In this document: one piece after another, positions 15,598 through 63,570 of the stretch
How positions within the stretch are numbered: position 1 is the first letter of the stretch
Layout of the letters: the number at the start of each line of letters is the position of its first letter
Source of the DNA: Selaginella moellendorffii
Lineage: Eukaryota > Plantae > Lycopodiophyta
Length of the DNA: 64,000 nucleotides
NCBI RefSeq assembly: GCF_000143415.4
Contig: NW_003314270.1
Coordinates: forward strand, 3,069,668-3,133,667
Direction of reading: 5' to 3'
Position numbers and translations under genes: made by a program
Notes under the pieces: generated by a model
What the model saw: only the letters and a program-made list of their open reading frames with translations
Told to the model about the DNA's origin: nothing
Database searches by the model: none

Positions 15598-15723
15598 CGC
15601 CCCTCCCACCCTAACCCTAAACCCTTGAGCCTCAAAATGTGATATCTTTGTTTATTTGGCATCACCACCACATTTACAATAATACCTGCGAAGAAGAAAA
15701 TGCGAAACAACGATCCCTGCCAA

Positions 15724-18451: not shown

Positions 18452-18691
18452 CTCCCAGATCTAGAATCTAGATCCGGCGCGCAATTAGATCGGCGACCTC
18501 GCGCTGCCGCTAAGTCGTACCTCGATTCATTCACTCACAGCATTGGCGTCTCCATCTCCGCCCTCCACACTGGGCGTGGGCGATGGGCGCCCTAATCCAC
18601 AAACGCTACTAAAGCTACTGTGTAGAAGATAGCGATTACGCTAAGCAAGATACCCTAAAATGTGCCCACGCCAAGAACCCTAAAATTTCTC

Positions 18692-19183
18692 ATGGCGCTG
18701 GCTGCGCGTAGGGCTTTGCGATCGCTGGCGGAATCGGGCGCTCTCTTCTGCCAGCGTCTCTGCGGCGTGAAGACGGCGGCATCGCCCAGCGGCGGCGCGG
18801 CAGCAGCGGGAGGATCGGGATCGGCGCCGCCGCGCAAGACCGGAATCGCGCACTCGCGCTTCACGCACGGCAATGTGTTTGTCACGATCACGGATTTCGA
18901 GGGCAACGCGAGGGCGCAGGCGTCGGCGGGGATGTGTGGATTCAAGGGCTCGCATCGCGACTCCAAGTTTGCGGCGAATGCGGTGGCGGAGCAGGCGGCG
19001 CGAGGGGCCGCGCAGCTGGGGATGAAAGCGGTGGAGGTGAGGCTCAAAGGAGGATTTGGGGTGGGCAAGAGGAAGTACTTGCTGCGAGGATTCAAGCAGG
19101 GCGGGCTCACAGTGCTCAAGATCAGGGACGTGACCGCCATTCCTTTCAATGGATGCCGCCCTCCAAAGAAGCGCAGGGTCTAG
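18692..19183 (+). CDS. RPS11: Nuclear-encoded organellar (probably mitochondrial) ribosomal protein S11
   Basis: Arg/Ala/Leu-rich presequence, then GIAH..GNVFVTITD, SAGMCGFKG, IRDVTAIPFNGCRPPKKRRV. Intronless. Confidence 0.9.
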   Translation: MALAARRALRSLAESGALFCQRLCGVKTAASPSGGAAAAGGSGSAPPRKTGIAHSRFTHGNVFVTITDFEGNARAQASAGMCGFKGSHRDSKFAANAVAEQAARGAAQLGMKAVEVRLKGGFGVGKRKYLLRGFKQGGLTVLKIRDVTAIPFNGCRPPKKRRV

Positions 19184-24785: not shown

Positions 24786-25118
24786 GAAAAAAAAACGAGA
24801 AAAAAAGTAAAGGAAAAACGTATCTAAGCTCTTTCTCGCAAACGTAGCACTTTTGTAGTAAGCGCGATTCCAAAGAACTCTCCTCTCTTATATGAAAGTT
24901 GCCACCTTTGTAGTAACAAAGTTCCAATCACATCTTATAAATCTTGGCGAAAGCATGTAAGTGCTTACCATCCAACACCTCGCGCATTGGTTTTAGGGCT
25001 CTGTGAGAAGATGACGTGTGGTGGTAAGCCAAGTGGCATCTCCGCAAGCCAACGGCCGCGCACCCTCTCTAAATGCGAGACTGCGATCGATCCGGTTCTC
25101 GCGAGAGAAGAAGGAAGG

Positions 25119-26066
25119 ATGGAGGCGATCGATCGCGGCGATGGCGGTGGCTGTAAGGAGGAAGAATGGTGGGGATGGCTGTGGATCGTCTTCTCCAAAC
25201 TGGACGGCCGGAGCCTGGCATCGTGCTGCTGCGTTTCGCGGGCGTGGCAGCAAGCGGCGGGGCAGGAGGAGCTGTGGCGCGGGCTGTGCGCCGCGGCGTG
25301 GCCGGGGCTGGCGCTGAGCGATTGCGGCGAGAAGGCGGTGAGTGTGGCGGGGGGATACCGCCGCTTCTACGGCATCCGGATGAGTGCCGCCGCGCAGCTC
25401 GGTGGCGGCGGTGGGCGATCCAGCCGCAGCAATCCCCGGCTGCGATTGCGGGAGCTCGTGTTTTTTCTCGACGTCCACTACAGGGACTCGCCGGTTTGCT
25501 CCATGGCCAGGGGCGGCGACACGCTCAAGCGGATGTTTCAAGCGGCAGCGGCGCCGCCGGAGCTCCACGATCATCTCGACAACGATGACGAAGATCAAGG
25601 TACATTTCGATTCGTGGTGGAGATCCCGACCTCTACGGGCGCCAGCGACGTGGATGCTCATCAACGTTCTACTGATGGCAATGTCGATTGCGCGGTGTGG
25701 GTGGGGAACTCCGGCAGCAATAGGTGGAGCAAGAAGGAGATACGCGACTTTACGATCAGCTGGGCGGTGATGGTGCGTGGCAGCCCAAAGGTTTTCCAGA
25801 TCCTGCGCTCGCGGCAGCCGGGGCAAGTGGTCGGCAATACTTGCAACTACTCGGAGAGGCTGCCCATCCATTCGTGCTGCTGCTGCTTGAGCGAGACGAA
25901 TCACGTAGCGGAGGTGGATCTCTACTTTTCAGCTGATGGCGGGGGACTGTTTCTTCGCGAGCTGCGGTGTAGCATCCTTAATACGGATTGTTGGAGGTAT
26001 TTCACTCAAGTGCAGGCGTTGCAGTACCTCCAACATGCACTCCTCCACGACTGCCAATTTTCATAG
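25119..26066 (+). CDS. F-box protein, intronless
   Basis: F-box motif LWIVFSKLDGRSLASCCCVSRAWQQAAGQEELWRGLC. Alternative ATG at 25011. Confidence 0.8.
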   Translation: MEAIDRGDGGGCKEEEWWGWLWIVFSKLDGRSLASCCCVSRAWQQAAGQEELWRGLCAAAWPGLALSDCGEKAVSVAGGYRRFYGIRMSAAAQLGGGGGRSSRSNPRLRLRELVFFLDVHYRDSPVCSMARGGDTLKRMFQAAAAPPELHDHLDNDDEDQGTFRFVVEIPTSTGASDVDAHQRSTDGNVDCAVWVGNSGSNRWSKKEIRDFTISWAVMVRGSPKVFQILRSRQPGQVVGNTCNYSERLPIHSCCCCLSETNHVAEVDLYFSADGGGLFLRELRCSILNTDCWRYFTQVQALQYLQHALLHDCQFS

Positions 26067-39206: not shown

Positions 39207-39393
39207 TGTAAGGAACCGACTCCCTAAGATGTCGTAGGCTAAAGGATCCCCAAAAGCTTGACCGAAATGACAAAGAGTGCACCCCCTTTTCCAATTGGTT
39301 AAGGGTCTTGGGATATTTGGGGTTAAGCGTCCTTGGGTTTGAATAGTACTGGGCTGGGTGACCTCCCGGGAAGTCCAAACTCAGGAGCTTACA
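39207..39393 (+). mobile_element. Cassandra-like LTR containing a 5S rRNA internal control region (39321-39376)
   Basis: TGTAAG...CTTACA termini, contains GGTTAAGCGTCCTTGGGTTTGAATAGTACTGGGCTGGGTGACCTCCCGGGAAGTCC, followed by a Met-i PBS. Confidence 0.85.
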
Positions 39394-46369: not shown

Positions 46370-46474
46370 AGCTAGTCTTTATTACTATTCTCATACTCTA
46401 TGACAAGCTCACGAGCATGTGTAATATTCTTAAGAGGTTCCCAAGTTGATTCATAAATAGGGTAACCTTTCCAC
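46370..46474 (-). mobile_element. Displaced C-terminal half of the chromovirus chromodomain
   Basis: Reads (K)WKGYPIYESTWEPLKNITHARELVIEYE, continuing EYLV from 60859 onward. Confidence 0.9.
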
Positions 46475-47094
46475 TTAAAAGCTCTATTTCGTTAAAGTGG
46501 GATTTATTCAGTAAAATGGGACTAGGTACAAATTTTCAAGTATTTGAAAATGACGTGAAATTATATGTTTTTTGTCCAGGGGCTAGACATATCTGGGGCA
46601 TGGTGACTAGCGCGGTGACTTTGTGTCCAGACTGAGTCCATCTGGTTGTATAATAAATCTCATTGTCAAGGTGAACAAGCCGAATCTGAAGCTAAAGAAG
46701 AGCAATGGCATGCGCGCACACACTATTTGTTTGTTCATTGAGCGTGTGGTGAGCTTTCCAAGATGAACGTCATTCCTATTAGCCAGACATATAACTTAAT
46801 GGTGAGAACATTTAGATATTATTCAATGTTATCTTTTTCTAACGAATCTAATTGTGAAGGTGTAGCAAGAGGCATTGCTAGTTTGGAGAAGTCATTTAAC
46901 TCATTTGACCCTTAGTGTATTTTCATGAAACTAAATAACATTCATATTATTAAGGAATTTCTCTAGTACCTTTTTTTTACGACATAGAGGCTTGCATTTC
47001 TTTCAAAGGTGATTTAGTAAAAGGCCTGAGGGCACATGCCATTCTATTTCTCAGACCGGTATTAAGATATACTAGTGCAAAGGGCCACATGCCA

Positions 47095-50000
47095 TCACGC
47101 CTCCTCTGATTCAGATTCGGATTGTTCACCTTGAAATAAAATACATTAGAAACTTAGTAAAGGAATATTAAATCTCACCTTGAACCCGGGTTATGAATGC
47201 TCTTGCTGCATCTCTTGCATGGTCTGGCAAGGTGATGGTGGCACTCTGCTTCTGCATCCAACAATGCACAACATTATCCACCGATATGCTCATGCTGGGA
47301 TCCCTTGGATTCAGCACCCATCTCTTTTCTAGGCAATCCTTCGTATATCCGGAACTTGGCTTGAACCACTCCACAGTTACATTGAAGGAGTTAGTTTCCG
47401 CGTCCTCCTCTGCATCAGTGATGCAGCGCCCCACCCATATCATTTGTTTTTTATTACTGGGTCTGACAAGCACGACCATTCCTTTGCAGACTTGTACTGG
47501 ATTGAATGCTGAATCAGGTCCCACAATAGTGATCCTCAACATCGTTATCTGTCACTGCATTTCCAGAGGACATTGTTCCGCTACTATCTGGTGCTTTGGG
47601 TTCTGGCCAAAAGGACTCTTCCAATTCTTCATATACAACCGGCCCATTTTGGATAGCAGATATAATCTTCTCCCAGTATTCGAGCAAAGGCTTGCACCTC
47701 TTAAAATAGGATTCTCCACCAAACACCAACCCCCTCTTCCAGAAGGCAATATGCTGTCTAATCCCAGCCACTATACTTTCCTGGTCTTTGAGTCCATCCG
47801 GGTGCATCGGCCGTGGGGAACCCTGAGGAATCATAGGTTCCCCAGTTATGGGATCTCTCTTGAAGAGTTCAATGCCGTCCACTGGCAGCCACACTGTGTC
47901 CCATTCTCTCATCTTGTACCTCATCACTGGAGCACCGTCACGCATGCTGAAATGAAATTGAAGAGGCTTGGAATGGCCAATCAGCGTTTCGGATCCGTCC
48001 CTGATGTAGCCTCTTACAAACCCCTTAAAGTCTGGAACCTCTGTCACAAGTGCAGCTTCAACAGTGCCTTTGATGCAATTTTGGAATTCATCGTAGAGTT
48101 GTGGGAGGGTGAGGACATTGGATCGCCGGAGGGACTCTGCCAGGTGACTGAACATGGCATCGATGTCTTCATGAGTGTGCCCAACCATGAGAAAGCCAAG
48201 TGTAACCGTTTCAAATATGCCTTTGGCAACAAGCATTGCCAAGTACGCGAAGACGTACATGTTTTTGTTCTCACTGCCAGCATTGTCTGTTTGGAGCAGA
48301 AGATGGGGTGGAAGGCCACATCGGCCGCAAGAACTTCCTTGAGATTCTGCTTCATTTGGATGAGGCTGTGCATTCACCGGGCGACCAGCCTCGTCGGAAT
48401 GGCATGAGGCCTCACGTGATAACCCTACAATCTGACAGCCAACATATTCACTGGGATGGCATGGGGCCCCACGCGATACTGCAAGCCTTTGCTCCTCCTC
48501 CAGCTGAACCCTGTATGGGGTTCGATCGACAAGGGCCTTATGCAAGGGTTGGCCGTTCAGCTCAGTCTGCGCACTTTGCAGAGACCTTAAGTGTTTTGCT
48601 AGGGACGCAATCATCATGTTTGCACCCCCGCCACCCCATAGAGGTACAAAGAAGTTCCCATAGTTCTGGGCACCATGCCCATGAGCGATTATGCCAAACA
48701 GAGACACAGGCAGCTGCATGGATGAAGAGATTGCCTTGGGGGCAGGATTGAGTCGAGGTAAGCACGTCTTTTTCTGGTCCATTTTGTCGTGGATGATGCA
48801 GAGGTAAGAGTCAGGTCTCTCCATGGAGAGAATCCTGTTATGATAATATGCAGTTCTGCAGCTTCTCTGCTCGATGTTGTGGTCGAGCCGCCTTCTAACC
48901 AACGTCTCTCGCTCTTGAGCGCTGCAAGAATTCTTCGACAAAGCCATTTTGATAGCAGTGCACTCGTCACACTTTGAAAAGCTGGAGTACTTTCCTATAC
49001 TCACATCCCTGAACCTGTTGCTCCACAATCAACTAAATCTAGATTGGCTCAGCTTCCTGTAGCCATTACTCTGGAGTTCCCGATTCACATCTTCCAATAT
49101 GGCCCCCTTGGTATACATGGAAGGGAGAACTCGTTGGGTGTCTCGTGTTCCATCTTCCAAGAGGCGGGTTTTATGTGGTTGCTGCTCGCTACATGTCTCG
49201 ACAAACCTCTTGAAGATTGCCTCTCCATATACAACATGACCCCTGGTTTTGTGCGTACCGTCGTTCCCATGGACTGCCTGTTGAACCCTTTGTTCCTCGA
49301 ACTCAGTTTTGATTCTGTAGAATGTGGTTCGAGGGACTCCATAAATGATTCTCCATGCCTTCATGCAGACCAAACCCCTCTGGAAGACCATGCCCCCCAC
49401 CTGATGTTCTGAAGCATCAACAGATGACCGTAATGCCTCATACACAAAATTGCGAGCTGCCTTCCAGGACAATGTCTTGTATCTTGCTCTCTCCTCTTCA
49501 ATAGCATCCCAATCAGCATGTTGACAGCACCTCCTCTTGCAACAAGCAACTGTCGAGACCATTCGAACCTCCATTGCCATTTTCTGCCTTTTCGGTTCGT
49601 TGCTCAGATCCCTTTGGCTGCGCTGTAGGAAGGTGTACTTTCTTTTCCCATGAAGAGATGTTCTGTCATCAGTTGTAGTGGTGTTTGATTGTGAGTCCTT
49701 CACATTCTCAAACACTAAATGCCTCAATTTCCACCGCACAATGCTTCCAATAGTCAGACTGTTTTCTTCTGTGTCAACAACCTCTAAAATTGCAACTCCA
49801 ATATCATCCCAGCCCAATTCTTGATTAGCAACCGCATCTCTTGGATCGACAACTGTGGCTAAGCCCTCAGCTACCACCTCCCCCTCGGGGTTGTTTAGAA
49901 ACACCTTTGCCTGAATCCATGTAGCACGGTTCTTAAGATCCACGGAGGGAACATGCGTCGCACTTGCGCTGTCCCCAACATCTGCTTTCTTCTGCAGATT

Positions 50001-50219
50001 TTTCAAGGCAACAACAACATTTACCCCGACGACCATCTCTCCTCGTTCAATAGCGACCACATTCCCATCGAAGACAGTCTCTACTGATACAGCAGCATTG
50101 CCTTCCCCAAGCCTTTGACAGTGTATAACAAAGTTCCGATCCATAGACACAAGGGTCCCTTTTGCAACTCTCTTCCCACCATTCAAAATGTAAACCTTTT
50201 CCCCAACCCTGAAGGCCAT
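47095..50219 (-). pseudogene. Sola-like DDD transposase with one in-frame TGA (49029-49031) and a +1 frameshift (~47520)
   Basis: Motifs FSKCDECT, IIHDKMDQ, LLLQTDNAGSENKN, FLMVGHTHEDIDAMF. ORFs 49029-50219 and 47514-49028 share a frame. Short last exon GEQSESESEEA*. Confidence 0.8.
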
Positions 50220-50573
50220 TCTGAAAGTGCAGAAAAGAAGTTAAGACCATACAAAAAATGATTGAAGAATGGCCTAAATCATAACATACCAAATAGCATG
50301 AGGCCACATGCCATTATTCAAATATGCTATTGACACCCACGTGAAATTTCGCATTCACAAAATTGGCATGAGCCCTCATGCCATTAGTGGTACCACTAAT
50401 GGCATGAGGCCTCACGCTATCTTTGGCCCCTGCTAGCCTGTTGCTATATTCCTTTTGCCTTGTGACAACTGTATATATTTTTGTGTGCGTGACTAGTCAC
50501 CCATACCATGAGAATATATACTAGTTGCCAGCATGGCATATGGACTATGGCAATAGGCTAGTAGCGGCCAAAG

Positions 50574-50595
50574 ATGGCATGAGGCCTCATGCCAT
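50574..50595. promoter_or_regulatory. Perfect copy of the element-specific 22-bp palindrome ATGGCATGAGGCCTCATGCCAT (representative of ~25-30 copies)
   Basis: Variants at 46705, 47021, 47074, 48399, 48456, 50293, 50363, 50399, 50672, 53964, 54773, 54850, 54910, 56187, 57686, 57827, 58018, 59295, 59370, 60447, 60739 and in each long tandem unit. Confidence 0.8.
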
Positions 50596-51229
50596 CTTGA
50601 TATACACACAGCTGCAGGCAAGTAAAAACATACATGACAATACGCTAGCCATGAAATTGCAAGGGCCCAAGATGGCATGTGGCCTCATGCCATTTCTAAA
50701 TGTGGTCCTAAACCATTCCATGGTGAACATACCAGGAAGCACAAGTGCCGAATATCAAGAGGAAGCGGTAGCCACACCAAAGACAGTGCCGCTCGCAACA
50801 CCGCAACTACTCGTAGCGCCGCTCGCAACACCGCAACTGCTCGTAGCGCCGCTCGCACAAACTGCCACTCGCATAAACTGCCGCTCGCAATGGCCCTCGC
50901 AATGCCGCAACCGCTTGTAGACGCATAAACCACAGCTCACAACGCCGCTTACACAAGCAGCGCTCACTGCGCTCAGCGGAACCAAGAACACGGCGCACAA
51001 AAATGATAGACCTAGGAATGAGTTCGAGAATTTAAAAATAACACACGCTTGAACGTCACATCAAATCCTCTGACAAACTAGATCTTATGATTCCTCTGAC
51101 AAATTTCAAACTGAGTAGCTTCTAGACTTTGCTGTCGGAGGTTGAACTTTGTCACATCATGTCCTTGCCTCGATCCAGCTGTGCCATGTCAGTGATTCGA
51201 ACTTTGCCATGCCATGTCAGCGATCCGCG

Positions 51230-53958
51230 CCAAGATTATTCGCCGTGTAAAGGAATAATTATGCTGTGTGTGTACGTCCATTTATGGCAATATAAGGCCA
51301 CATGCCATTCAAAGAATAATGCTAGTCGAGCATCTTTTGGTGCATTTTTGGGTTCAAAATTGCATGAGCCCACACGCTATAAAGTTTACCTGTACCAAAA
51401 ATAGAAACAGCTTTATTTACTTGGGAATTTATATGGTTGAGGCATTTTTAAACTTACAAACACATGCCCTACTTACATTCCTTTGGTTGCTTAAAATTCA
51501 AAAATATTATAAACCTTTCTTTTTGCATTTTCAATGTTTTCAATTATGGTTTTTGATTTTCGCAGGACCAGCCTAGTAATCTATTTGCATCCCGTCATGT
51601 TTATAGCTAGCTTTCGTTTGTCCCCTTCGCTAGCCTGAGATACATCTGCTCGGCATCTGCCTCTTACAGCATTTGCCCAGAAAGGGCATCTTTCTTCACG
51701 CAGCATTTGCCACATGTTTAGGGTTAGGGTTTAGGGTTTAGGGTTTAGCAATTCAGTAGCTTGATAAACATGCAAATACAGAACTTGATGCAAAATCCTT
51801 TGATATGTCACAATGCCCCTAGGACCATAAACACATTTCAATAGAGAGGGTCCTTTCATTTCATAACTCCTTACGTAGATCTTGGTGAAACCAGAGTTAG
51901 TGAAGTTGGTTTCTTGTAATCCCGCATCTGATTGTGATGTCCCTTTGCAGTGTCGATGGAAAGGTCAATGCACACCAAACTGTAGAATCTTGGAGCAAAA
52001 TAACGGTCGGATCTATGGCAGATGCCCCTGAAACATTGTAAGGCTCGTGTGGTCTCATGTGGTGTCCGATCGAGATGCTTCTTTGCAGGGTCATCAAGAA
52101 GGACATTGTATACCATTCTGTAAAATCTGGTTGCGATCTAACGGTTGGATCTCCAGGAAACTCAAAACAATCTCGCGCGTGTCAGAATATTCTAGGAATA
52201 TACTCCTATGTGCTCCAAGATTATTCGCCGTGTAAAGGAATAATTATGCTGTGTCATTTATGGCAATATAAGGCCACACGCCATTCAAAGAATAATGCTA
52301 GTCGAGCATTTTTTGGTGCATTTTTGGGTTCAAAATTGCATGAGCCCACACGCTATAAAGTTTACCTGTACCAAAAATAGAAACAGCTTTATTTACTTGG
52401 GAATTTAAGTGGTTGAGGCATTTTTAAACTTACAAACACATGCCCTACTTACATTCCTTTGGTTGCTTACATTCCTTTGGTTGTTAGCTTTCGTTTGTCC
52501 CCTTCACTAGCCTGAGATACATCTGCTCGGCATCTGCCTCTTACAGCATTTCCCCAGAAAGGGCATCTTTCTTCACGCAGCATTTGCCACATGTTTAGGG
52601 TTTAGGGTTTAGGGTTTAGCAATTCAGTAGCTTGATAAACATGCAAATACAGAACTTGATGCAAAATCCTTTGATATGTCACAATGCCCCTAGGACCATA
52701 AACACATTTCAATAGAGAGGGTCCTTTCATTTCATAACTCCTTACGTAGATCTTGGTGAAACCAGAGTTAGTGAAGTTGGTTTCTTGTGATCCCGCATTT
52801 GATTGTGATGTCCCTTTGTAGTGTCGATGGAAAGGTCAATGCACACCAAACTGTAGAATCTTGGAGCAAAATAACGGTCGGATCTATGGCAAATGCCCCT
52901 GAAACATTGTAAGGCTCGTGTGGTCTCATGTGGTGTCCGATCGAGATGCTTCTTTGCAGGGTCATCAAGAAGGACATTGTATACCATTCTGTAAAATCTG
53001 GTTGCGATCTAACGGTTGGATCTCCAGGAAACTCAAAACAATCTCGCGCGTGTCAGAATATTCTAGGAATATACTCCTATGTGCTCCAAGATTATTCGCC
53101 GTGTAAAGGAATAATTATGCTGTGTCATTTATGGCAATATAAGGCCACACGCCATTCAAAGAATAATGCTAGTCGAGCATTTTTTGGTGCATTTTTGGGT
53201 TCAAAATTGCATGAGCCCACACGCTATAAAGTTTACCTGTACCAAAAATAGAAACAGCTTTATTTACTTGGGAATTTAAGTGGTTGAGGCATTTTTAAAC
53301 TTACAAACACATGCCCTACTTACATTCCTTTGGTTGCTTACATTCCTTTGGTTGTTAGCTTTCGTTTGTCCCCTTCACTAGCCTGAGATACATCTGCTCG
53401 GCATCTGCCTCTTACAGCATTTCCCCAGAAAGGGCATCTTTCTTCACGCAGCATTTGCCACATGTTTAGGGTTTAGGGTTTAGGGTTTAGCAATTCAGTA
53501 GCTTGATAAACATGCAAATACAGAACTTGATGCAAAATCCTTTGATATGTCACAATGCCCCTAGGACCATAAACACATTTCAATAGAGAGGGTCCTTTCA
53601 TTTCATAACTCCTTACGTAGATCTTGGTGAAACCAGAGTTAGTGAAGTTGGTTTCTTGTGATCCCGCATTTGATTGTGATGTCCCTTTGTAGTGTCGATG
53701 GAAAGGTCAATGCACACCAAACTGTAGAATCTTGGAGCAAAATAACAGTCGGATCTATGGCAAATGCCCCTGAAACATTGTAAAGCTCGTGTGGTCTCAG
53801 GTGGTGTCTGATCGAGATGCTTCTTTGCAGGGTCATCAAGAAGGACATTGTATACCATTCTGTAAAATCTAGTTGCGATCTAACGGTTGGATCTCCAGGA
53901 AACTCAAAACAATCTCGCACGTGTCAGAATATTCTAGGAATATACTCCTATGTGCTCC
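51230..53958. repeat. Long tandem repeat, 3 units (985, 871, 871 bp), each with (TTTAGGG)3-4 and degenerate palindromes
   Basis: Units start CCAAGATTATTCGCCG at 51230, 52215 and 53086. Telomeric motifs at ~51717, ~52594 and ~53465. Confidence 0.95.
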
Positions 53959-54744
53959 TGAAAATGGCATGCGGCCCCACGCCATTCAAGAGATAACGCC
54001 AGATGACGCCGAGCATTTTTTGGTGCATTTTTTGGGATCAAAATTGCATGAGCCCACATGCTTGAACGTCACATCAAATCCTCTGACAATTTATTTAGCT
54101 GAACATCTGGCATTTTTGGAAATACAAGATGCTTTGGAATATCCAATCATGCATGGTATAAATATAGCGAGGGTATTAAATGATATCCCAATCATGATCT
54201 TTCTTTTGGATTTCGCGTGCATGCAGTCCGAGGAATGATGACGTTGTGGATTTCTTTTGGATTTCACGCATGCGCGCGCCGATCCAGAAATTAATGGTGG
54301 CGCCCAAGTCCGAGAAATGATGACGTGGCGGGATTACCAACCGTCGTGACATTTCGCGCGTGTGAGGTTAGGTTTTGCATTTTGCTTCGTACTCGCGCTC
54401 GCACACTCGCGCTCCCACTCGCGCTCGCATCGCGCTCCCACTCGCGCTCCCACTTCTCTACAGGTTTCTCGTGTGCATCGGCGTCCACTCGCGCTTGCAT
54501 CACACTCGCGCTCGCATCGCGCTCGTGTGCATCGGCGTCCACTTCAAGACACACCCAGTTTGTAACTTCGCCGCCAACTCCGCCGCCCACTCCGCCACCC
54601 ACACGCAGCCCACTTGGCGTCCCGGGAGATTTCAGCGCCACTCTCCAACTTTAAGTGGCAGAGTAGCCTTGCTGCTACAATCCGCTGCACACACAGTGCA
54701 CATTCGCCAGCGAGTCCGGTTGTCACGCCTCCATTCGGCTTCAA

Positions 54745-57700
54745 ATGGTAAGTCTTTTAGGCCAAGTAGAAAATGGCATGAGGCCACATGCCATTCAGTA
54801 GCAACATTGGCATGCACCGATTGGGCTCTCAAGTGCAGTCCGGTTACAGATGGCGTGTAGCCTCACGCCATCTTAGGATGCAGCCTCAAGACATCTGATG
54901 CAATGGTGAATGGCGTGTGGCCTCACGTTATTTCCAGCTACTAGCTTTTCATCTGTCAGCTCTAATTGTTGTGCATTTCTGAACAGGCGAGGAATTGCGT
55001 TCTTCTTCCAGCCACTGTCAATGTGGATGCAGAGAAGGGGGAGGAGCTCACCAGTTGGACTTTCGGGATGGAAGGCGAGGATCTGAGGCTGTACAACACA
55101 GATGGTGGGAGAAAAGAATGCATGGGGATCCTCATCCAAGTGACAAACACTCCATGCAGTTCCATGCAAGAATATAGACTGGCACTTGTGGTAGAGACAG
55201 CGTCCGCCTTCAAGATCCACCTTGCACATCCTAGCGGCTTCTCGGAGGGGGGCAGCGGCTATGAGGAATTCCTAGAGGGAGCTAGGGAGAGGTTGTCCAG
55301 GAGGCCCACAATTTCAAAGACACTGCGGGTCTATGAAGATCACATGGAATTCACGGACCTCACCTACGGCGATGTTCAAAAACTATATTCCAACATTGAG
55401 CCGTTGAGAGTGACTCCAATTCGCGAAGCAAAGGGGAAGGGGGTCGATCTGGAAACTACCTCAAAGCAGAAAAGGGTGGTCAAGCTCAAGCCGACGTCCG
55501 ACTCTCCTGCTCCAAAAAAGAAGCTACTCAGTGATGCCATTGCCTCGGGTTCGAACACTACACCCACCAAAAAGAAGAGCCGCAAAGAGCAGAAAGAGCA
55601 AGAAGAGGCAGCAAAAATCGTCGCAGATAATAGTACTTGTTACTATTCCAACAAAGTATATACAATCGACGTGAGCCGTATCGACATCCAAAGCAAATAC
55701 AACCACAGGCTAGTATCTGATGAGTGGGTGGAGAAATTGAAGCAGAAGATGCTGGCAAGTCCAGTAACACCCGACATCACAGACGTGATCCCCTACTACC
55801 AAAAAATGAAGGGCGAGATGAGGTTTCCAGACTTGATCAATAGGAAGGTGTTGGACGATCAGAACATCCGGTTCTATGCCGTCTCCGGGCAGCATTCTAG
55901 CTTGGCGATGCAAGAGATAGTTGTGGAATTTATGGTGGGCGAGGAGGTGAAGAAAGTCTTCAAGACAAGAGTTGTCCGCCTGATAAAAGGCAACTCGCCC
56001 CTCCGATCTATCATATACATCTCCCACGCGCAGAATGTCAAGCAAGAAACGTGCTACAAATCGGGTCTGCACGAGACATTGGCACGAACACGGAAGCTCT
56101 GGGTTCAACTGAAGAAGCCACAAAAACCAGGACAAGGACGTGCACTAGCAACTAGCGCCTGGCAGGTAAGCCTCGTTGTATGTGGCATAACATGTGGCCT
56201 CACGCCATTTCCATTGCAGGAATTCTCGAGTCTTCTCTCGAAAACACTGGGGGTCAATGACACACTCAGCATCCATAACATTCTACTCGCGACAAAAGTT
56301 GTTTTTGACAAATGGGTAGATGTGCTGAGGAGGTACCATGACGGGGAGTTGCCAAACTCAATGGGTGTGGAGGACAGCCGGAAGCCCAATGATTTGAAGC
56401 TCAACGCCTTGCGTTTCTCGCGGTCTCTAGACGACGACGACCTTCTGACAGTGGCTAATGCTCTTCTACGTGGTGAGGTTGTCTTCAACAAGACCAAAAT
56501 GACTCCCGGCCATATTGTGACATACGAGGACTTGTGCACGACTCTGAGAGCTCGTGCGCTATTGAAGGATTGGATCTTCGAGCAAGTGGCCGTGGAGAGG
56601 GTGAGCATCGACACCACGCAAGAGATGATGGAAGCGCTGGAGTTGTCAAATGAAGACATCGACGAGTACGTGAAGGGGGCCCCCAAGTTCATCGATCTGC
56701 TGCGGGATGCCACGAAAAGTAAAGCTGAGAAGTTGGATCAGTATCCAAATTTCATTAAGATTGATGTCGACTGCCGGCTTCAGAAACAGCTCGACCCTGC
56801 AGCAGAGGCCTATCGAGAACCTTACCGGGTATACTTGAATTCGGATGAGGATCAAAGGTGGAGGAGCATCGTTTCCCGCGGAGATGAGCAGGTCAAGAAC
56901 ATCTTTTGTGTGATGGACTTCACAAACGAGGAGATCACTCATGCAGACGAAGTCAGCTCCATCATTGACTTAATGGTGGGTCTTGCGGAGGTGGAATCTT
57001 CAGTCCACTATATGATCTATGACTCCGAATCCTATCACAAGTTCTGGAAGTCCTTGAACGAGGTGAAGGCTCGGTTGAAAGGCAAGGAGATGCAGGAGAT
57101 CCATGGGATAATGGCTAAGAAGAAGATACCGACGAATGTCCGCATCTTCACACTCGCCCTTGTTATTGGTCCTGCAGCAGAGTGGGACTGGAGTGACTTC
57201 CCAGCTTCGTTCGACAAGGCCAATCGAATTGATCTGAGGGAGGTCAATTTACCCGTGCCTGAGGAACTGAAGACGGCTATGGAGCTTTCGAATCCAAAGA
57301 AAGCTCCAGGTGCAGCATGGGAAATGCTCAGCTGGGTCTTCAATGCAATAGCGGGTGGGTCACCTGCTTCCGACTCCAAGGGCAAATGCGTTGTCGAGTA
57401 CAACTGCGGCGGACTATTCTTTTGAGCCGCACTACTCAAGGGTGTCCCGTGTGTTGCGGTGACAAACTCCATTGAAGAGGTGACTTCAATGGAGCATATA
57501 ATTACAGTTGCTAAAGAAAAACAGTATCTTCTCTGCGAACCTGGTGAGTATGCACTTTAAGTTTAAATGTTATCTCACAAGCTCTGTATGCAGGAGCGTG
57601 GCCACCCCCAGATGCTGAAACGGCGTTAACAGCTACTGTTGAAGATACCCATGTTGGGCTGAGCTCACAACCTGCACAAGGTAAGGTCACGTGAGGCCTC

Positions 57701-60412
57701 ACGCCATTTTGATTATAGATCGTTGTGAATATTCAGACACGAGGACTGAAAAGCGCACTGGTGGCGCATCGAAGAAGGACAAACAGAAAAGCAATAGGAA
57801 AAAAGGAGGTACAAATTATATTTGCAATGGCGTGTGGTCTCATGCCATTCCTTGAGGGAGAAACTTCTTCAAAGGCAAAACAGGCAAGCACCAGCCAAGC
57901 TCAAACTGACAGTGGTCATAAAAAGCGAAAGCACGTTGGACAGTCGTCGAGATCAGAGGCGTTTAATTCGAAAAGGAAGAAGGGCAACGAAAAGATGATA
58001 GGTAATGCCTCGCGGTTATGGCGTGTGTGCTCATGCCATTCATTGCAGATCAAGGGCTGAGTGAAAGCAGGCAGTCACCACCTCATGACTCAGATTCCTA
58101 TGGCGGACTCCCCTTCCCCAATCTCAATGGAGAGGTACAATGGATGAGGGAAGCTCTTCAAGTCAGGGCCACGTTTTTCTCATCTCGTCGTCTTCGAAGG
58201 GTGCAAGAATGTGCAGAAACCATGTTAAGACAGTCGGGTGAGGATACGGTCCTAGGTCACGCACTAAAACAGGCTATGGATGTCTTCTATTCTGAGATGG
58301 AGACTCGGCCAGATGATTTTCCCAAGATGGTCCTGGAAGAACAAGCCATCCAGCCTGAGCAGCCTATGGAAGAAATGCAGGAGGGGGATGAGGAGCCAGA
58401 GAAAGATAATGAGCAGGAAGAGCAGAAGGACGAAGAGGAGGACAAAGAAGAGGAGGACGAAGAAGAGGAGGACAAAAAAGAGGAGGACGAAGAAGAGGAG
58501 GACGAAGAAGAGGAGGACGAAGAGGACTTGGATGGTCCTCACAATGGTGACGATCACAATAACAACGACGACGATGATGACGACGATGGCCAGCCTGAGG
58601 TGGCCAAAGAGCGGCGGAGGAAGGTCATACAAGACAAACCATCAGGTAAATAATAATACATCCATTCTTAACCTTTTACCATTTCTAACATTGTCCATGT
58701 AGGTCGCAGAGCAAATGGTAAGTAGAGATTATTCAGTTGAATTTACAAACTCTAGCCTTTAGTGTCGAGGAAGGATAGTGCCAAGCAAGGGTCGAAACGT
58801 ATGTCCAATCCTTCAGAATCAGCAGTGCGCTCAAGTGATATCGGTCCTAGTTCCTCAATAGCAGTTGATGGTAAATACAGTATAGTCGATTCAATGTGCT
58901 AATGAGTTTGTTTTTAGTAGCACGGGAGGATACCATCTCAATCGAAGGGAGATATTTGGACATGCATATGGATCCGCCAGTGGACTCTACTTGGCTGCAA
59001 GAGTCATCAGAGCTGGTGGAGGCTACTATCCATATCAACGCCAAGCAAGCTGACCACGCTCCACTTGATGCTGCCCATACCACTGAGTCAATCTTGTCCA
59101 CGTATCCAACTGACGGTGACCAGGCGCCATTGGACCCACATGAGGCCACCCCAGCCGCCGAGCCGGTCGTATCCTCATTTCCAACGGACTCAACGTGTGC
59201 CCAATCGTCTGACTACGCGCCGTTGGAACCTCCCTACACCGCCCCTGCTGCCTGTTCGGTCATGTCCACTTTGCCAACGGAGGCACCAGCTGAAATGGCG
59301 TGTGATCACACGCCATCGGAACCACCCCATGCCACTGTTGAGCCAGTTGTACCAGAGTCTACAGCTGAAATGGCATGTGCCCACACGCCATCGGATGCGA
59401 TTGACCCCACATTGCAGAGGAGAGTATTTCCGCCCTTCACGTTTCCTCGACCAAAACCCTCTCAACGACCATCGGGAGCAACATTCGCTAATATTGTAGA
59501 TGGTAAAATTGACTTGTACCATTTTTTATGCTGACGCATTTAATTTCAGAGTCACGGCGAAGGTACTATATCGTTTTTGATCTGAACGGTGTCCTTTTCT
59601 CCCATGAGCATGGCTCGTCCTCGAATGTCATTGCACCCTCCAAAGCCTGCGGTCGCAAGTTGGTCAAAAGAGACAGATTCACATTAATCACACGGGAGAA
59701 ACTGCGGGATCTAATAATGACCATGCGACACTTAAAACAGAGGGCCGGGTTCAATTTGCAATTGGGAGTTTGGACATCCATGATGCACCACAATGCATTA
59801 ACGTTGCTACAGATGATGCACGATCAGACGCGAGTAATATTACCATTTGACTTTCTCCTAACGCAGGAGGATTGCTTGACTATGGTCCATGTGAGGGGTA
59901 GCAAGCCCATCTTCGTCAAGCCAGAGGCTGTAGTGATGAACCGGACTGCTAGCTCAAGTGAAATCCTCATCATCGATGACTCGCCGATTAAAACTGCAGC
60001 GAACACGCACACATATGCAGTGCACCCCATCTCTTGCAGTATGGAAACTAGGGAGAAGAAACCGTATGTTCTGGGGGACCTTGCAAAACGGCTTGGAGCG
60101 ATGGTGATAGAGAACCGGCCAGTCCAGGAGGTGGCTGCAGAAATCAACCAAATGGCAGATGGAACGGTATATCAGAAGCCATTTGATCGGACAGACACTA
60201 GTCATCATTTATGGCATGTATATTGTCTAGCCAAGCACTATCCGCATCTCCATAATCTACTCAACCGGATGGGTTCTTCGACCACTGAACATGAGCGTGG
60301 ACGTATTAGAGAAGAGATGGCATTACTATTGGGTTTAAATCCTGATAGTGTGGAGAGTGATGAAATTCCAAGATTATTGTATAGGCGTTGGAGGCAAAAA
60401 ATAACAGTCTGA
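54745..60412 (+). pseudogene. Large spliced accessory gene: ParB/Srx-like domain + degenerate MTase-like region + acidic tract + FCP1-like HAD phosphatase; one in-frame TGA at 57423-57425
   Basis: Predicted introns 54748-54986, 56166-56219, 57544-57593, 57681-57736, 57809-~57860, 58002-58048, 58646-58702, 58718-58762, 58871-58920 and 59502-59549 join the ORFs in frame. Motifs FYAVSGQHS..SHAQN, VFDLNGVL, LGVWTSM, ILIIDDSPIK. Confidence 0.7.
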
Positions 60413-60858
60413 GATGGCATGTATTTATTTAAAAATGTAACTTATTATGGCATGGGGTTCCATGCCATTGTATTAATATTAAAAGACAATTCTTTGAGAG
60501 GATTTGCATTATACTAGAAGTGTTACAGCATGTTATTGGAAGTCTACGAAGTTGTTTTATTAATAATGGGAAAGTAAAGATTGAATGGGGACTTGGGCTC
60601 CACCTAGACTCGGAGCAACTGAGCCAATATTAAAAGGATGGAAAGAAATTGGACGACGATGACAAGGAGAAGAGAGAGGTGAAGCAGTGGCAGGGGGAGG
60701 AGAAGTGATTGAGTAGACATTTCCTTGTTTAAAATAAAATGGCATGTGCCTCAATGCAGTTGAATTTTGTTATATTTATATACTATATAAAGGTTTGGAA
60801 ACATTATTTTACAAGTGGGATAATGACAATTCCCACTTTAACGAAATAGAGCTTTTAA

Positions 60859-63570
60859 CTAGATATTCCTTGGAATGACCACCACAAGCTTTGCGGGACA
60901 AGAGAATCATCTTGAACTCATACTCCATGTCAACATTCACAACTTCTGGAGGGGGACGAATGTCCAAAGAGCGATCCACATCAACATGATATGGTGCTAG
61001 TAAACTGACATGAAACACATTATAAACATGGGACAACTCATCCGGAAGATCCAACTTATAGGATACATCACCAACTCGCGCCAATACCCAATAGGGTCTG
61101 ACATATCTCGGTAATAGTTTCTGAGATAAAGCTCCCTTAATATTCAAGTTCTAGGAAAATAGCCATACCTGATCTCCCACTTGATAGGATACATCCTGAC
61201 GATACTAATCTTTATCACGTTGATACCTATCCTAAGCTTTGTCCATCGCCTTAGTAGCTCTAGACCAACCTTGGTGTAGCTACTCCATATAAGTCTCACC
61301 ACTTGCAATCTTCGACAACCGATCCATAACCACCATCAAAGTATCATAACCTTCAAACTTTGGCAAGCAAGTGACAAAATGAAGTGTCACACTTTGAAAT
61401 GGCTATGCCGGTGCTAGACTACATTGCAACTTTCCAGCCTACTTCTTAGTTCTGTGTTTACATTGCTGGCATATAGGGCAGGAACGGACATAGTTCACTA
61501 CATCACCTTCCATACCAGATCAGAAAAATCCCTTTTTCAACGAATCCAAAGTCTTTCAGTTTCCACCATGTCCAGTTGTTGGAACATTATGGTGTTCCCG
61601 CAAAAACAACTACTGCAGATCCTTAGAGGGAAGATACAATCTTTCTTGCTTATAAAATATAAGCCTATCCCAAACTGAGAAGTGAAGCTTCATATTAGTG
61701 TGACTAGCAACTTTTGTTGCTTTGCTACCAGGGTTTTGCTTTGACAACTCCACATGGTGTAAGATTGCTTTCACCAACAGATCACTTCCATATGAAGCCC
61801 GAACATCCTCCAACCAATCTGAATTAATTATCGATATTTCCCAGAACTAAGCTTGATGACTCAATGCATCCGGAACAATATTGTCTTTACCATGTTTATA
61901 TATAATTTCAATATTATATCTAGCAAGCTTCTTTTGCCAACGAGCCTACTTTAGCATAGGTTTAGACTTCATAGCAAAGTAGCTTAGTGTGTTACTATTT
62001 GTATGAACCTTGGTGTGTCCACCCAAGTAGTGTCTCCAGTGTTCCAATGCCGACACTATAGCAAACATTTCTTTCTTGTGCGTTGGCCATTTTTGTTGGG
62101 TTTCATCCAATTTCTTGGAATAGAACGCAATAGGACAACCATGTTGCTTTAGCATAACATCAACCACTTTATCACAATCTTGCCGCAACACAGCACCAAT
62201 AGCATAGCCAGATGCATCACAATGCACTTCGAAGGGTTTATCAAGATCCGGAATCTTGAGAACAGGAACTGTAGTCAAAATCTCCTTCAACTGTACAGAA
62301 GCACACTAACAAGCTGGTGTCAAATGAAATGACTACTCTTTTTATCAAGATCTAGGATCCTAAGAATAGGAATTGTAGTCATGATCTTCTTTAATTGTAC
62401 AAAAGCACACTAACAAACTGGTGTCTAATGAAATGGTATACTACTCTTCGTTAACTCAGTGAATAGAAGACCGATTTTTGCAAAATTGTGGACAAACTTG
62501 CGATAATATTATGCCAAACTGAGAAAGGAACGAACATCTGATACAGTGGTCAAAACTTCCCAGAACTTCACCACTTCTGTCTTATTTGGATCCACCTCAA
62601 TTACGCTACCACCAACTATATGTCCAAGAAAGTTCACGCACAATTTTCCAAAAGCACATTTAGTTTCTTTAGCATATACTTTGTGTTCACGCAATTTCTG
62701 AAACACCATCTCCAAGTGTTTCAAATGATCTTCCAATGTCTTTCACTAAAAACTAAAATATCATCAATATATAGGACAATAAATATGTCCAAATAATCTC
62801 TGAAAATTCTATCCATCATAGTGTTTAATGTCGCCGGAGCATTGCATACGGCATGACAAGGAACTCATAAGATCTATACTGAGTTTTAAAGGCTGTCTTC
62901 TTTGTTTCAAATGATCCTCCAACGTTTTACTGAAAACCAGAATATCGTCGATATATAGGACAACAAATGTGTTTAGATAATCTCGAATATTCTATCCATC
63001 ATAGTGCTGAACATTGCCAGAGTATTGCATAACCCAAATGGCATGACAAGGAACTCATAAGATCCATACTGAGTCTTAAAGGTTGTCTTCTTCACATCTT
63101 GATTTGCCACCCGTATCTAATGATATCCAGACCGCAAATCAAGTCGCGTAAAATACTCAGCCTTTAAGAGTTGGTCAAATAAGTCATCAATGCGAGGCAA
63201 AGGATAACTATTTTTTACCGTGATTTTGTTGAGTGCCTGATAGTCAATACACATCCTCATGATTCCATTCTTTTTCATAACAAAAAGGACCGGCACTCCA
63301 TAAAGTGACTTGCTATAAGCTCCTTAAATTTAGACTTCCCAGTACTATTCAAACCCAAAGACGCTTAACCCCAAATATCCCAAAACCCTTAACCGATTGG
63401 AAAAGGGGGTGCACTCTTGTTCATGGGCCCTTTCCTTCTATATTTGAACCCCATGAATCGTCTTTTGAGTCATTTTCTTTGGTTGCTTACACTTGTTTGG
63501 TCGAATGTGACCTTTATCAAAAAGCTTCATGAGTTGCTTCTTGAGTTCAGCCATCTCCTTGATGTTCAAT
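60859..63570 (-). mobile_element. Degenerate chromovirus (Ty3/Gypsy with chromodomain) pol
   Basis: [51 protein letters not shown]-region KLLPRYVRPY..VFHVSLL, chromodomain EYLV(K). Frameshifts and internal duplications. Confidence 0.9.
63314..63491 (-). mobile_element. Solo Cassandra-like LTR inserted in chromovirus pol
   Basis: TGTAAG...CTTATA termini, near-perfect 5-bp duplication (CTTGC/CTTGT on the plus strand), splits GHIRP|SKS. Its 5S segment lacks the C-box part. Confidence 0.8.

What the first reader, a model, noticed from the sequence alone, without database searches (positions are those of the whole stretch)
46479..60854. Giant two-gene DNA transposon that moved as one 14.4-kb unit
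Seen: perfect 24-bp TIRs flanked by TTAA. Removing the element rejoins GAA TAT CTA GTT AAG TGG AAA GGT (EYLVKWKGYPIYESTWEP), a canonical chromodomain now split 14.4 kb apart. Transposase, long tandem array and accessory gene therefore transposed together. Known: TTAA targeting occurs in piggyBac, Kolobok and Sola3, and the DN..ENKN / GHTHEDID motifs are Sola-like. Inference: short AAG-starting TIRs, TTAA, a Sola-like enzyme and a large accessory gene do not match a plant superfamily architecture I recognise.
Basis: partly seen in the sequence, partly recalled or inferred. Interest (0 to 1): 0.9.

Follow-up and report, generated by a model that had tools for sequence, protein, structure and literature searches.

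The report
Three-gene Sola1-type plant DNA transposon
A 14.4-kb cut-and-paste transposon of the known but little-studied Sola1 kind sits inside a plant retrotransposon; it carries two extra genes that a distant liverwort relative also carries, and dozens of copies of a palindrome found nowhere else in the window.

Summary
Perfect 24-bp inverted ends (46479-46502 and 60831-60854) are flanked by TTAA on both sides. Removing the element plus one TTAA rejoins a retrotransposon chromodomain in frame.

The transposase belongs to Pfam DUF7869. Its catalytic motifs match Sola1, not Sola3, Kolobok or piggyBac. Sola1 is already recorded in the moss Physcomitrella, so the superfamily is not new to plants.

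This copy is defective. The transposase has an in-frame stop and a frameshift that other copies lack.

The cargo is not a one-off capture. A Riccia sorocarpa (liverwort) element whose transposase is only about 32% identical has the same layout. An ~800-aa gene runs divergently from the transposase, followed by a NIF-type phosphatase-like gene. The ~800-aa proteins are weakly but collinearly homologous, and the Riccia one has a weak DNA N6-methyltransferase signature.

The new point is the palindrome ATGGCRTG-N6-CAYGCCAT. It occurs 22 times, all inside the element, clustered upstream of each gene, in short candidate introns and in an 871-bp tandem array. Riccia and at least six metagenome relatives each carry their own different palindrome. 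I read these as binding sites for an element-encoded protein; that is inference.

Verdict: a new variant of a known kind, of moderate interest.

The parts
46475..46478 (.). Left TTAA target-site duplication
   Evidence: Only a 4-bp duplication restores the chromodomain frame.
46479..46502 (+). Left terminal inverted repeat AAGCTCTATTTCGTTAAAGTGGGA. A related subterminal motif (TCCCATTTTACTGAATA on the minus strand) lies just inside it.
   Evidence: The Riccia locus L002 has TCCTATTTTACTGAATA about 1.4 kb beyond its transposase gene.
47171..50219 (-). Transposase gene, broken in this copy. N-terminal part 50219-49032, then an in-frame stop at 49029-49031. Catalytic core 49028-47517 (Pfam DUF7869). 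A frameshift near 47519, then a C-terminal beta-rich domain 47542-47171.
   Evidence: Pfam DUF7869 E 2.2e-43. 4521 representative relatives. P0215 and L001 read through the stop position. P0073 reads through the frameshift. AF2 pLDDT 86 with RNase H-like strand/helix order.
48399..48477 (.). Two palindromes inside the hypervariable, disordered linker of the transposase ORF (residues 184-210 of the core piece)
   Evidence: The linker is unconserved in the alignment and has low pLDDT at residues 196-233.
50293..50693 (.). Cluster of five palindromes 75-475 bp upstream of the transposase ATG
51227..54070 (.). Tandem array of about 3.2 units of 871 bp between the divergent genes. Each unit carries palindrome copies and a run of (TTTAGGG)n.
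54773..54931 (.). Cluster of three palindromes immediately upstream of ORF819. The first lies in a GTAAGT...TCAG candidate intron.
54966..57425 (+). ORF819, accessory gene 1. It contains a ~55-nt in-frame candidate intron with a palindrome at 56187-56208. Weak similarity to the Riccia protein continues in frame past the stop at 57423-57425 to about 57560.
   Evidence: No Pfam, NCBIfam, PADLOC or PDB sequence hit. Collinear similarity to exons of the Riccia 805-aa gene, best segment 40% identity, E 2e-5. Post-stop similarity is not significant on its own.
57690..58039 (.). Three palindromes between ORF819 and the next ORFs. The one at 58018 lies in a GTAATG...TTGCAG candidate intron.
58018..59534 (+). 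Low-complexity ORFs: an acidic E/D-rich one at 58018-58653 and a P/T-rich one at 58896-59534 holding two palindromes at 59295 and 59370. They are probably 5' exons or leader of the phosphatase-like gene.
   Evidence: The first exon of the Riccia NIF gene is likewise low-complexity.
59528..60412 (+). NIF/FCP1-type phosphatase-like ORF, accessory gene 2. The motif at the catalytic position reads DLNGV rather than DxDx(T/V).
   Evidence: Pfam NIF PF03031, E 2.9e-5, 24.2 bits against a cut-off of 21.8. No PDB sequence hit. The Riccia element has a NIF gene in the same relative position.
60447..60468 (.). Subterminal palindrome near the right end. Matching ones near the left end are at 46705 and 47021.
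60831..60854 (-). Right terminal inverted repeat
60855..60858 (.). Right TTAA target-site duplication
46371..46476 (-). C-terminal half of the interrupted host chromodomain (degenerate Ty3/gypsy integrase end)
   Evidence: Pfam Chromo E 1.7e-8, profile positions 22-52
60857..61006 (-). N-terminal half of the interrupted chromodomain, ending ...KEYLV
   Evidence: It gives no Pfam hit on its own.

Best explanation
This is a recently inserted but now defective copy of a large Sola1-group cut-and-paste DNA transposon of a land plant. A DDD transposase with an RNase H-like fold recognises the 24-bp TIRs and subterminal motifs. It excises the whole 14.4-kb unit and inserts it at TTAA, duplicating those four bases. 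This copy landed in the chromodomain of an already degenerate Ty3/gypsy element.

The element carries two lineage-conserved accessory genes. One encodes an ~800-aa protein whose liverwort homologue has a weak beta-class N6/N4 DNA-methyltransferase signature. The other encodes a NIF/CTD-phosphatase-like protein that lacks the second catalytic Asp.

The element also carries about 22 copies of its own 22-bp palindrome. These sit upstream of each gene, in short candidate introns, near both ends and in a tandem array. I infer that they are binding sites for a dimeric element-encoded DNA-binding protein, either the transposase N-terminus or the ~800-aa protein. Such a protein would co-regulate the element's genes or protect them from silencing. 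The closest functional analogue is the VANC system of Arabidopsis VANDAL elements.

Shown: TIRs, TSD, precise target, transposase family and fold, defects of this copy, conserved gene order, element-specific palindromes in several lineages. Inferred: which protein binds the palindromes, what the accessory proteins do, and that all three genes are needed by the element.
For: - TIR, TSD and target.
- Transposase family: Pfam DUF7869 E 2e-43 and 4521 relatives.
- Motifs: IIHDKMDQ / TDNAGSENKN / GHTHEDID line up with Sola1-1_AP VFDLEK / SDNCGGQNRN / GHTQS. They do not line up with the Sola2 or Sola3 representatives.
- Fold: AF2 pLDDT 86, pTM 0.85, order beta1(D81)-beta2-beta3-alpha-beta4(D248)-alpha-beta5-alpha(D288/D290). 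D248 is invariant and D288/D290 are at least 90% conserved in 60 sequences.
- Other copies at 97-98% identity: L001, which is internally deleted and ends at the same TIR, P0215 and P0073.
- Conserved layout: Riccia L002 has NIF gene <- 805-aa gene <- | -> DUF7869 gene. The window, flipped, has NIF-like <- ORF819 <- | -> transposase.
- ORF819 versus the Riccia exons: collinear matches including YAVSGQHSS / LAISGQHSS.
- Riccia C-terminal exon versus M.RsrI: E 0.004, including TVLDFF.G.G. Pfam N6_N4_Mtase E 0.0017.
- Palindromes in the window: 22 of 22 inside the element, 0 expected. Half-site CAYGCCAT is 20 of 20 inside.
- Palindromes in Riccia: 31 copies of its own palindrome at L002 655-13232 and none in 13233-22912. 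They cluster upstream of all three gene starts, and the three inside the transposase gene all fall in introns mapped from the annotated protein.
- Other relatives have their own palindromes: L003 x20, L039 x9, L025 x8, L035 x5, L077 x3, L008 x3.
- VANC precedent: PMC5735166.
Against: - No Repbase or Dfam comparison or phylogeny was possible. Sola1 assignment rests on motif-level comparison with one published representative and on Pfam DUF7869.
- Foldseek found no significant PDB neighbour (best E 0.025). RNase H-fold transposases appear only among weak hits.
- Only one complete element was seen. TTAA could not be confirmed in a second copy, because the L001 junction reads GAGCTT|AAAG and fits TTAA only if the T-run is 2 nt shorter.
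- ORF819 has no database homologue in two large searches. Its AF2 model is unusable (pLDDT 40).
- The methyltransferase signal is sub-threshold. It is seen in Riccia only, and the window-versus-Riccia alignment there is not significant (z 1.4).
- None of 80 metagenome loci with related transposases showed an ORF819 or NIF homologue. The three-gene layout is therefore documented in just two lineages.
- No expression or binding data exist. The intron calls in the window are by eye.
Confidence: 0.72

Rival explanations
1. The palindromes are transposition cis-elements. They would be extra transposase-binding sites that help synapsis or excision, like the subterminal repeats of Ac, En/Spm or P elements. 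They would not be regulatory or anti-silencing sites, and the accessory genes would be unrelated to them.
For: Relatives in which no accessory gene was detected still have palindrome arrays, so the one protein common to all is the transposase. Some copies lie subterminally, at 46705, 47021 and 60447.
Against: Most copies are far from the ends. They cluster just upstream of each gene start in both the window and Riccia. The TIR and subterminal motif is a different sequence and is more conserved between the window and Riccia than the palindromes are.
Confidence: 0.25
2. One-off cargo: ORF819, the NIF-like ORF and the tandem array are host sequences captured by this lineage or copy (a Pack-type element) and have no role for the transposon.
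For: ORF819 has no detectable homologue in very large protein databases. The accessory genes were not seen in 80 related loci. ORF819 may carry a premature stop.
Against: The same order and orientation, with a homologous ~800-aa gene and a NIF gene, occur in a Riccia element whose transposase is only 32% identical. The element-specific palindrome sits upstream of each accessory gene in both species.
Confidence: 0.08
3. It is a Kolobok or piggyBac element, the classical TTAA-specific superfamilies. Kolobok in particular has 5'-RR...YY-3' termini and a two-gene Kol0 group.
For: TTAA duplication and termini AA...TT fit the Kolobok description in PMC9587614. The element has more than one gene.
Against: The transposase hits DUF7869 and no piggyBac (DDE_Tnp_1_7) or THAP model. 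There is no C/DxxH motif between the second and third catalytic residues (read from the alignment). The motifs match Sola1. piggyBac termini CCC...GGG are absent.
Confidence: 0.04
4. The palindromes are host-genome introner-like or foldback micro-elements, or host transcription-factor sites, that happen to be enriched here.
For: Several sit inside ~50-nt GT...AG candidate introns. The L035 and L077 palindromes contain CATGCATG, which I recall as the RY element of plant B3 factors; this was not tested here.
Against: None of 22 lies in the other 50 kb of the window. Each transposase lineage has a different palindrome. At 22 bp they are too short to be mobile on their own.
Confidence: 0.05

Closest known systems
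Sola1 group of the Sola superfamily (Bao, Jurka and Kapitonov 2009; Repbase). 'Physcomitrella Sola1' is listed for plants in PMC9033089.
   Same: DDD-type catalytic motifs in the Sola1 pattern, a 4-bp target-site duplication, short TIRs, a transposase of about 1000 aa, and presence in a non-seed plant.
   Different: The length is 14.4 kb, against a mean of about 5.4 kb for curated bivalve Sola1 (PMC10294476). It has two additional conserved genes, a dispersed element-specific palindrome and an internal 871-bp tandem array. Whether Repbase Sola1 entries share the TIR, the TTAA preference or these extras could not be checked.
VANDAL (Mutator-like) elements with the VANC anti-silencing protein in Arabidopsis (PMC5735166)
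   Same: A multi-gene plant DNA transposon. Short sequence motifs are concentrated in non-coding parts of the element, often as tandem repeats, and differ between related elements. An element-encoded accessory protein acts on its own element.
   Different: A different superfamily and unrelated proteins. The motifs here are 18-22-bp palindromes. Binding and hypomethylation are not shown here; the resemblance is on the cis side only.
Kolobok Kol0 group (two-gene, TTAA-specific; PMC9587614)
   Same: TTAA duplication, RR...YY termini and more than one gene.
   Different: The transposase family is different: DUF7869/Sola1-like, with no C/DxxH motif and no THAP hit. No KolX-like protein was detected.
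Bacterial and phage beta-class N6/N4 DNA methyltransferases such as M.RsrI (PDB 1eg2)
   Same: The C-terminal exon of the Riccia accessory protein aligns with M.RsrI over about 100 residues, including HP..K and TVLDFF.G.G (E 0.004).
   Different: The signal is sub-threshold. At the place where a DPPY catalytic motif would be expected, the sequences read DVTH (Riccia) and DFTN (window); this is a reading by eye. The window protein gives no hit itself.

Membership tests
Sola superfamily, Sola1 group | Transposase with an RNase H-like core and a DDD triad in the Sola1 motif pattern (D on beta1; DNxxxxN[KR]N after beta4; GHT..D after beta5) | tested here: met
   Motifs compared with Sola1-1_AP from the Majorek 2014 supplement. 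AF2 topology. Conservation of D248, D288 and D290. This is a motif-level comparison with one representative, with no tree.
Sola superfamily, Sola1 group | 4-bp target-site duplication | tested here: met
   TTAA on both sides, and the host frame is restored only with a 4-bp duplication. The 4-bp rule for Sola is from my memory of Bao et al. 2009, which could not be opened.
Sola superfamily, Sola1 group | Group-specific termini and target preference as curated in Repbase | not testable with these tools
   Repbase, Dfam and the original paper were not available.
Sola3 group | Sola3 catalytic motif pattern (KDYCQ ... SDNASSYHGN in Sola3-1_HM) | tested here: not met
   excerpt compared with the window sequence.
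Kolobok | TTAA duplication with 5'-RR...YY-3' termini | tested here: met
   AA...TT termini. Criterion taken from PMC9587614.
Kolobok | Kolobok-type transposase with a C/DxxH motif between the second and third catalytic residues, often a THAP domain; KolX second protein in the Kol0 group | tested here: not met
   No such motif in residues 248-288. There is no THAP hit, and DUF7869 was the only Pfam hit to pass its cut-off (two weak sub-threshold hits aside). No direct comparison with Kolobok sequences was made.
piggyBac | DDE_Tnp_1_7 transposase and CCC...GGG termini at TTAA | tested here: not met
   TTAA is present, but there is no Pfam DDE_Tnp_1_7 hit and the termini are AAG...CTT.
PIF/Harbinger (classical two-gene plant TIR element) | 3-bp TWA duplication, DDE_Tnp_4 transposase and a Myb-like second protein | tested here: not met
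   The duplication is 4 bp. No such Pfam hits.
VANC-like sequence-specific anti-silencing system (functional class) | Lineage-specific short motifs enriched in non-coding parts of the element, including tandem repeats | tested here: met
VANC-like sequence-specific anti-silencing system (functional class) | An element-encoded protein binds those motifs and removes silencing marks | not testable with these tools
   This needs binding and methylome experiments.
NIF/FCP1/SCP phosphatases (Pfam PF03031) | HAD-type fold with a catalytic DxDx(T/V) motif | tested here: inconclusive
   The Pfam hit is just above its cut-off (24.2 against 21.8 bits). The motif reads DLNGV, so the second Asp is absent. 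No PDB sequence hit.
Beta-class N6/N4 DNA methyltransferase | AdoMet-binding motif I (FxGxG) and catalytic (D/N/S)PP(Y/F/W) | tested here: inconclusive
   The Riccia exon matches the motif I region of M.RsrI (E 0.004; Pfam E 0.0017 below cut-off). No DPPY-like motif was recognised. The window ORF819 gives no hit.
ParB/Srx-like DNA-binding domain (idea for ORF819 residues ~230-330, from the SGQHS motif) | ParB/Srx fold with a DGxHR-type motif | tested here: inconclusive
   The profile search of the PDB gave nothing relevant. The AF2 model is too poor to judge.

The most novel reading that the evidence does not exclude
Bryophyte Sola1 elements may carry a self-recognition module that evolved independently of VANDAL/VANC. 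A fast-evolving palindrome is placed upstream of every element gene and in its introns. An element-encoded dimeric DNA-binding protein would read it. A catalytically degenerate N6-methyltransferase-like protein and a CTD-phosphatase-like protein would then keep the element transcribed in the face of host silencing.
Probability: 0.2. Interest if true: 0.8.

Novelty: new variant of a known kind. Interest (0 to 1): 0.55.

Why it matters
Sola elements are among the least studied eukaryotic DNA transposons. No structure, no binding sites and no accessory functions are known for them.

This locus gives a textbook-clean insertion, with perfect TIRs, a TTAA duplication and a host reading frame that closes exactly. 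It also points to two things that can now be tested directly.

- A three-gene Sola1 architecture is conserved between this plant and a liverwort.
- Element-specific palindrome arrays recur across the transposase family, with a different sequence in each lineage.

If the palindromes are read by an element protein, this would be a second, independent example of sequence-specific self-recognition by a plant transposon. It would also be a possible source of programmable DNA-binding modules.

Tried and rejected
- Two large word-indexed protein searches for ORF819, one alone and one as an alignment with the Riccia exons, found nothing.
- The AF2 model of ORF819 with a 6-row alignment was unusable (pLDDT 40), so no fold search was run on it.
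- The ParB-like idea for the SGQHS region got no support from a PDB profile search.
- NCBIfam and PADLOC gave nothing for the accessory ORFs.
- A PDB sequence search with the NIF-like ORF gave nothing.
- I first thought transposase residues 160-238 were an intron. Other copies and homologues read through the region. The Riccia introns lie elsewhere. I therefore treat it as a variable linker that may or may not be spliced.
- I tried to define the ends and TSD of the Riccia (L002, L005) and L004 relatives. A related terminal motif was found, but no TIR pair lay within the fetched flanks.
- A TTAA-flanked pair in L057 turned out to lie inside a much longer terminal inverted repeat, so it is not evidence for a TTAA duplication.
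- Species identification failed. Exact look-up of five host ORFs found nothing, and the UniParc and Logan accessions could not be resolved offline.
- Bao et al. 2009 and Yuan and Wessler 2011 could not be opened. Literature searches for the Sola1 target preference were unproductive.
Full report
OBSERVATION

The 24-mer AAGCTCTATTTCGTTAAAGTGGGA occurs exactly twice in the window, in inverted orientation. The sites are 46479-46502 and 60831-60854, with no mismatch and none expected by chance. TTAA lies immediately outside both ends.

On the minus strand the right flank reads ...KACGGHSKEYLV. The left flank continues KWKGYPIYESTWEPLKNITHARELVIEYE. The left half matches Pfam Chromo from profile position 22 to 52, starting at its first residue (E 1.7e-8). 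The insertion therefore split a chromodomain, and only a 4-bp duplication restores the frame.

The host element is a degenerate Ty3/gypsy integrase tail with several stops. A blind scan for TTAA-flanked inverted repeats recovers the same pair.

TRANSPOSASE

Three adjoining ORFs lie on the minus strand: 50219-49032, 49028-47517 and 47542-47171. The middle one carries Pfam DUF7869 (E 2e-43).

An exhaustive profile search found 4521 cluster representatives at E <= 0.001. Named relatives come from the liverwort Riccia sorocarpa, from bivalves and from a xanthophyte alga.

A published RNase H superfamily alignment gives the Sola1-1_AP core as ...VFDLEK... / ...FYSDNCGGQNRN... / ...ERGHTQS. The window has IIHDKMDQ / QTDNAGSENKN / VGHTHEDID at the corresponding places. 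The Sola2 representative (DFAENYT / TDGCAGQYKN / SHG) and the Sola3 representative (KDYCQ / SDNASSYHGN) do not fit.

With a 60-sequence alignment, AlphaFold gives a confident model (pLDDT 86, pTM 0.85). The element order is beta1-beta2-beta3-alpha-beta4-alpha-beta5-alpha. D81 lies on beta1, D248 directly after beta4, and D288/D290 at the start of the helix after beta5. D248 is invariant, and D288 and D290 are at least 90% conserved.

Foldseek finds no significant solved neighbour. The best E-value is 0.025. The weak hits include Mos1, SETMAR, Sleeping Beauty, TnsB, IstA, PIWI and terminase nuclease domains.

I therefore file the enzyme as Sola1-like, with the caveat that no Repbase tree could be made. 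Kolobok would also fit the TTAA duplication and the AA...TT termini (PMC9587614). However, its transposase features are absent. piggyBac and PIF/Harbinger fail on the Pfam family, the termini or the duplication length.

STATE OF THIS COPY

Other copies from the same or a very close genome are 97-98% identical.

- L001 is a Logan contig. It has a 1.47-kb internal deletion and ends at the same TIR.
- P0215 is a 764-aa UniParc protein, collinear with 50219-47931.
- P0073 spans the C-terminal junction.

Both L001 and P0215 have a sense codon where the window has an in-frame stop at 49029-49031. P0073 reads through the point near 47519 where the window is frameshifted and about 14 nt shorter. The window copy therefore cannot make a full-length transposase.

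The L001 junction reads GAGCTT|AAAG. This fits a TTAA site only if the T-run is 2 nt shorter, so the TTAA preference is not confirmed in a second copy.

ACCESSORY GENES

The plus strand carries ORF819 (54966-57425), two low-complexity ORFs, and a 294-aa ORF. The last matches Pfam NIF just above its cut-off, and its motif reads DLNGV in place of DxDx(T/V).

ORF819 has no hit in Pfam, NCBIfam, PADLOC, PDB sequences or two very large protein searches.

The decisive comparison is a Riccia sorocarpa locus, L002. Upstream of its DUF7869 gene, and divergent from it, lie an annotated 805-aa gene without Pfam domains and then a NIF-domain gene. This is the same order and orientation as in the window.

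ORF819 and the Riccia gene share collinear similarity over about 350 residues. Examples are YAVSGQHSSLAMQE / LAISGQHSSRAQQL and LDDDDLLTVANALLRGEVVF / LSDSDLKLAWTVLEEGKVWV. The best segment has E 2e-5.

The last Riccia exon aligns with the N6-adenine methyltransferase M.RsrI across the AdoMet-binding motif (E 0.004). The Pfam N6_N4_Mtase hit has E 0.0017, below its cut-off.

In the window the corresponding stretch (...VVEYNCGGLFF, stop, AALLKGVPCVAV...) runs through the ORF819 stop codon. That local alignment is not significant on its own (z 1.4).

The accessory genes are thus conserved partners in two plant lineages whose transposases are only about 32% identical. Their biochemical roles remain unproven. 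No ORF819 or NIF homologue was found in 80 metagenome loci carrying related transposases, most of them short.

PALINDROMES

The motif ATGGCRTG-N6-CAYGCCAT occurs 22 times with at most 2 mismatches. All 22 lie between 46705 and 60468, and none is expected by chance. The half-site CAYGCCAT is 20 of 20 inside the element, which makes up 22% of the window.

The copies are distributed as follows:

- five within 475 bp upstream of the transposase ATG;
- three directly upstream of ORF819;
- three before the next ORFs;
- two before the NIF-like ORF;
- copies in each 871-bp tandem unit;
- one to two near each end;
- several inside ~50-nt GT...AG segments that look like short introns.

The Riccia element has a different palindrome, CATGGGGACGCGTCCCCATG. 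It has 31 copies between L002 655 and 13232 and none in the remaining 9.7 kb. The clusters lie upstream of all three gene starts. The three copies inside the transposase gene all fall in introns mapped from the annotated protein.

Further relatives each have their own palindrome upstream of the transposase:

- L003, CCTATGGC-N6-GCCATAGG, 20 copies, partly in a ~153-bp array;
- L039, TACGAACG-NN-CGTTCGTA, 9 copies;
- L025, TTTACGGACGCGCGTCCGTAAA, 8 copies;
- L035, 5 copies;
- L077, 3 copies;
- L008, 3 copies.

By contrast, the subterminal motif is similar between the window and Riccia: TCCCATTTTACTGAATA against TCCTATTTTACTGAATA. Two kinds of cis element therefore exist: conserved ends and fast-evolving internal palindromes.

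MECHANISM

The mobile unit, its target and its enzyme class are shown. The role of the palindromes is inferred.

They are perfect dyads of 18-22 bp, they are lineage-specific, and they lie close to promoters. These properties point to a dimeric, element-encoded DNA-binding protein. The transposase N-terminal region is the only candidate present in all lineages. The ~800-aa protein is a second candidate in the plant elements.

The closest precedent is VANC of Arabidopsis VANDAL elements. Its target motifs lie in non-coding parts of the element, form tandem repeats and differ between related elements (PMC5735166).

The main rival reading is that the palindromes serve as auxiliary transposase-binding sites for transposition itself.

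NOVELTY

Sola is a known superfamily, and 'Physcomitrella Sola1' is already listed for plants (PMC9033089). Sola clusters are rare among active plant TIR elements (PMC12973397).

I could not find the following described anywhere: the 14-kb three-gene architecture conserved with a liverwort, the methyltransferase-like and NIF-like partners, and the family-wide palindrome arrays. Repbase and Dfam entries could not be inspected, so the architecture may already be curated.

I rate it a new variant of a known kind, with an interest score of 0.55.

Noticed in passing
window 51716-51748, 52593-52619, 53464-53490: Each 871-bp tandem unit inside the element contains four to five copies of (TTTAGGG), the plant-type telomere repeat (a telobox-like run).
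   Followed up: partly
window 4052-5578 (+) and 11001-12638 (-): Two long intron-free AMP-binding enzyme ORFs (Pfam AMP-binding plus AMP-binding_C) lie in inverted orientation. Matching inverted-repeat arms lie between them, near 5859-5900 and 10599-10620. This looks like an inverted gene duplication.
   Followed up: partly
window 13056-13958 (-), 23081-23920 (+), 24987-26066 (+): Host gene fragments: PRP3 splicing factor, a histidine kinase with an AHK4/CRE1-type receiver domain, and an F-box protein. They mark the source as a plant. The species was not identified.
   Followed up: partly
L057 1-9819 (freshwater metagenome contig Ga0114981_10003604): A 9.8-kb contig whose two ends are inverted repeats of at least 140 bp reaching the contig termini. 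It carries a DUF7869 transposase ORF, a 701-aa ORF with a sub-threshold Tudor_5 hit (30.6 against 31 bits), and divergent 801-aa and 353-aa ORFs with no Pfam hit. All ORFs are long and uninterrupted. It is possibly another multi-gene relative, with long TIRs.
   Followed up: partly
L001 196-2088 compared with window 50210-49969: The second copy (L001) lacks 240 nt in frame, corresponding to residues 4-83 of the window N-terminal ORF. That removes one of two small beta-rich repeats. A weak Transposase_23 hit falls in this repeat, and relatives carry DUF8039 there.
   Followed up: no
window 39303-39331 compared with 63364-63388 and ~63909: Inverted repeats of 19-29 bp link the region near 39.3 kb with the region near 63.4-63.9 kb. 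They are probably parts of retrotransposon copies in opposite orientation around the insertion site.
   Followed up: no
window 54391-54614: Short GC-rich tandem repeats with periods of 12-23 nt (for example ACTCGCGCTCCC) lie just upstream of the ORF819 palindrome cluster.
   Followed up: no
L004 12626-12730 and 13179-14653: Two DUF7869 genes lie tail to tail in a 1-Mb ENA contig. A duplicated terminal motif (TCTCAATTTAATGGA / TCTCAATTTAATGAAAT) resembles the doubled subterminal motif of the window element. The boundary was not resolved.
   Followed up: partly
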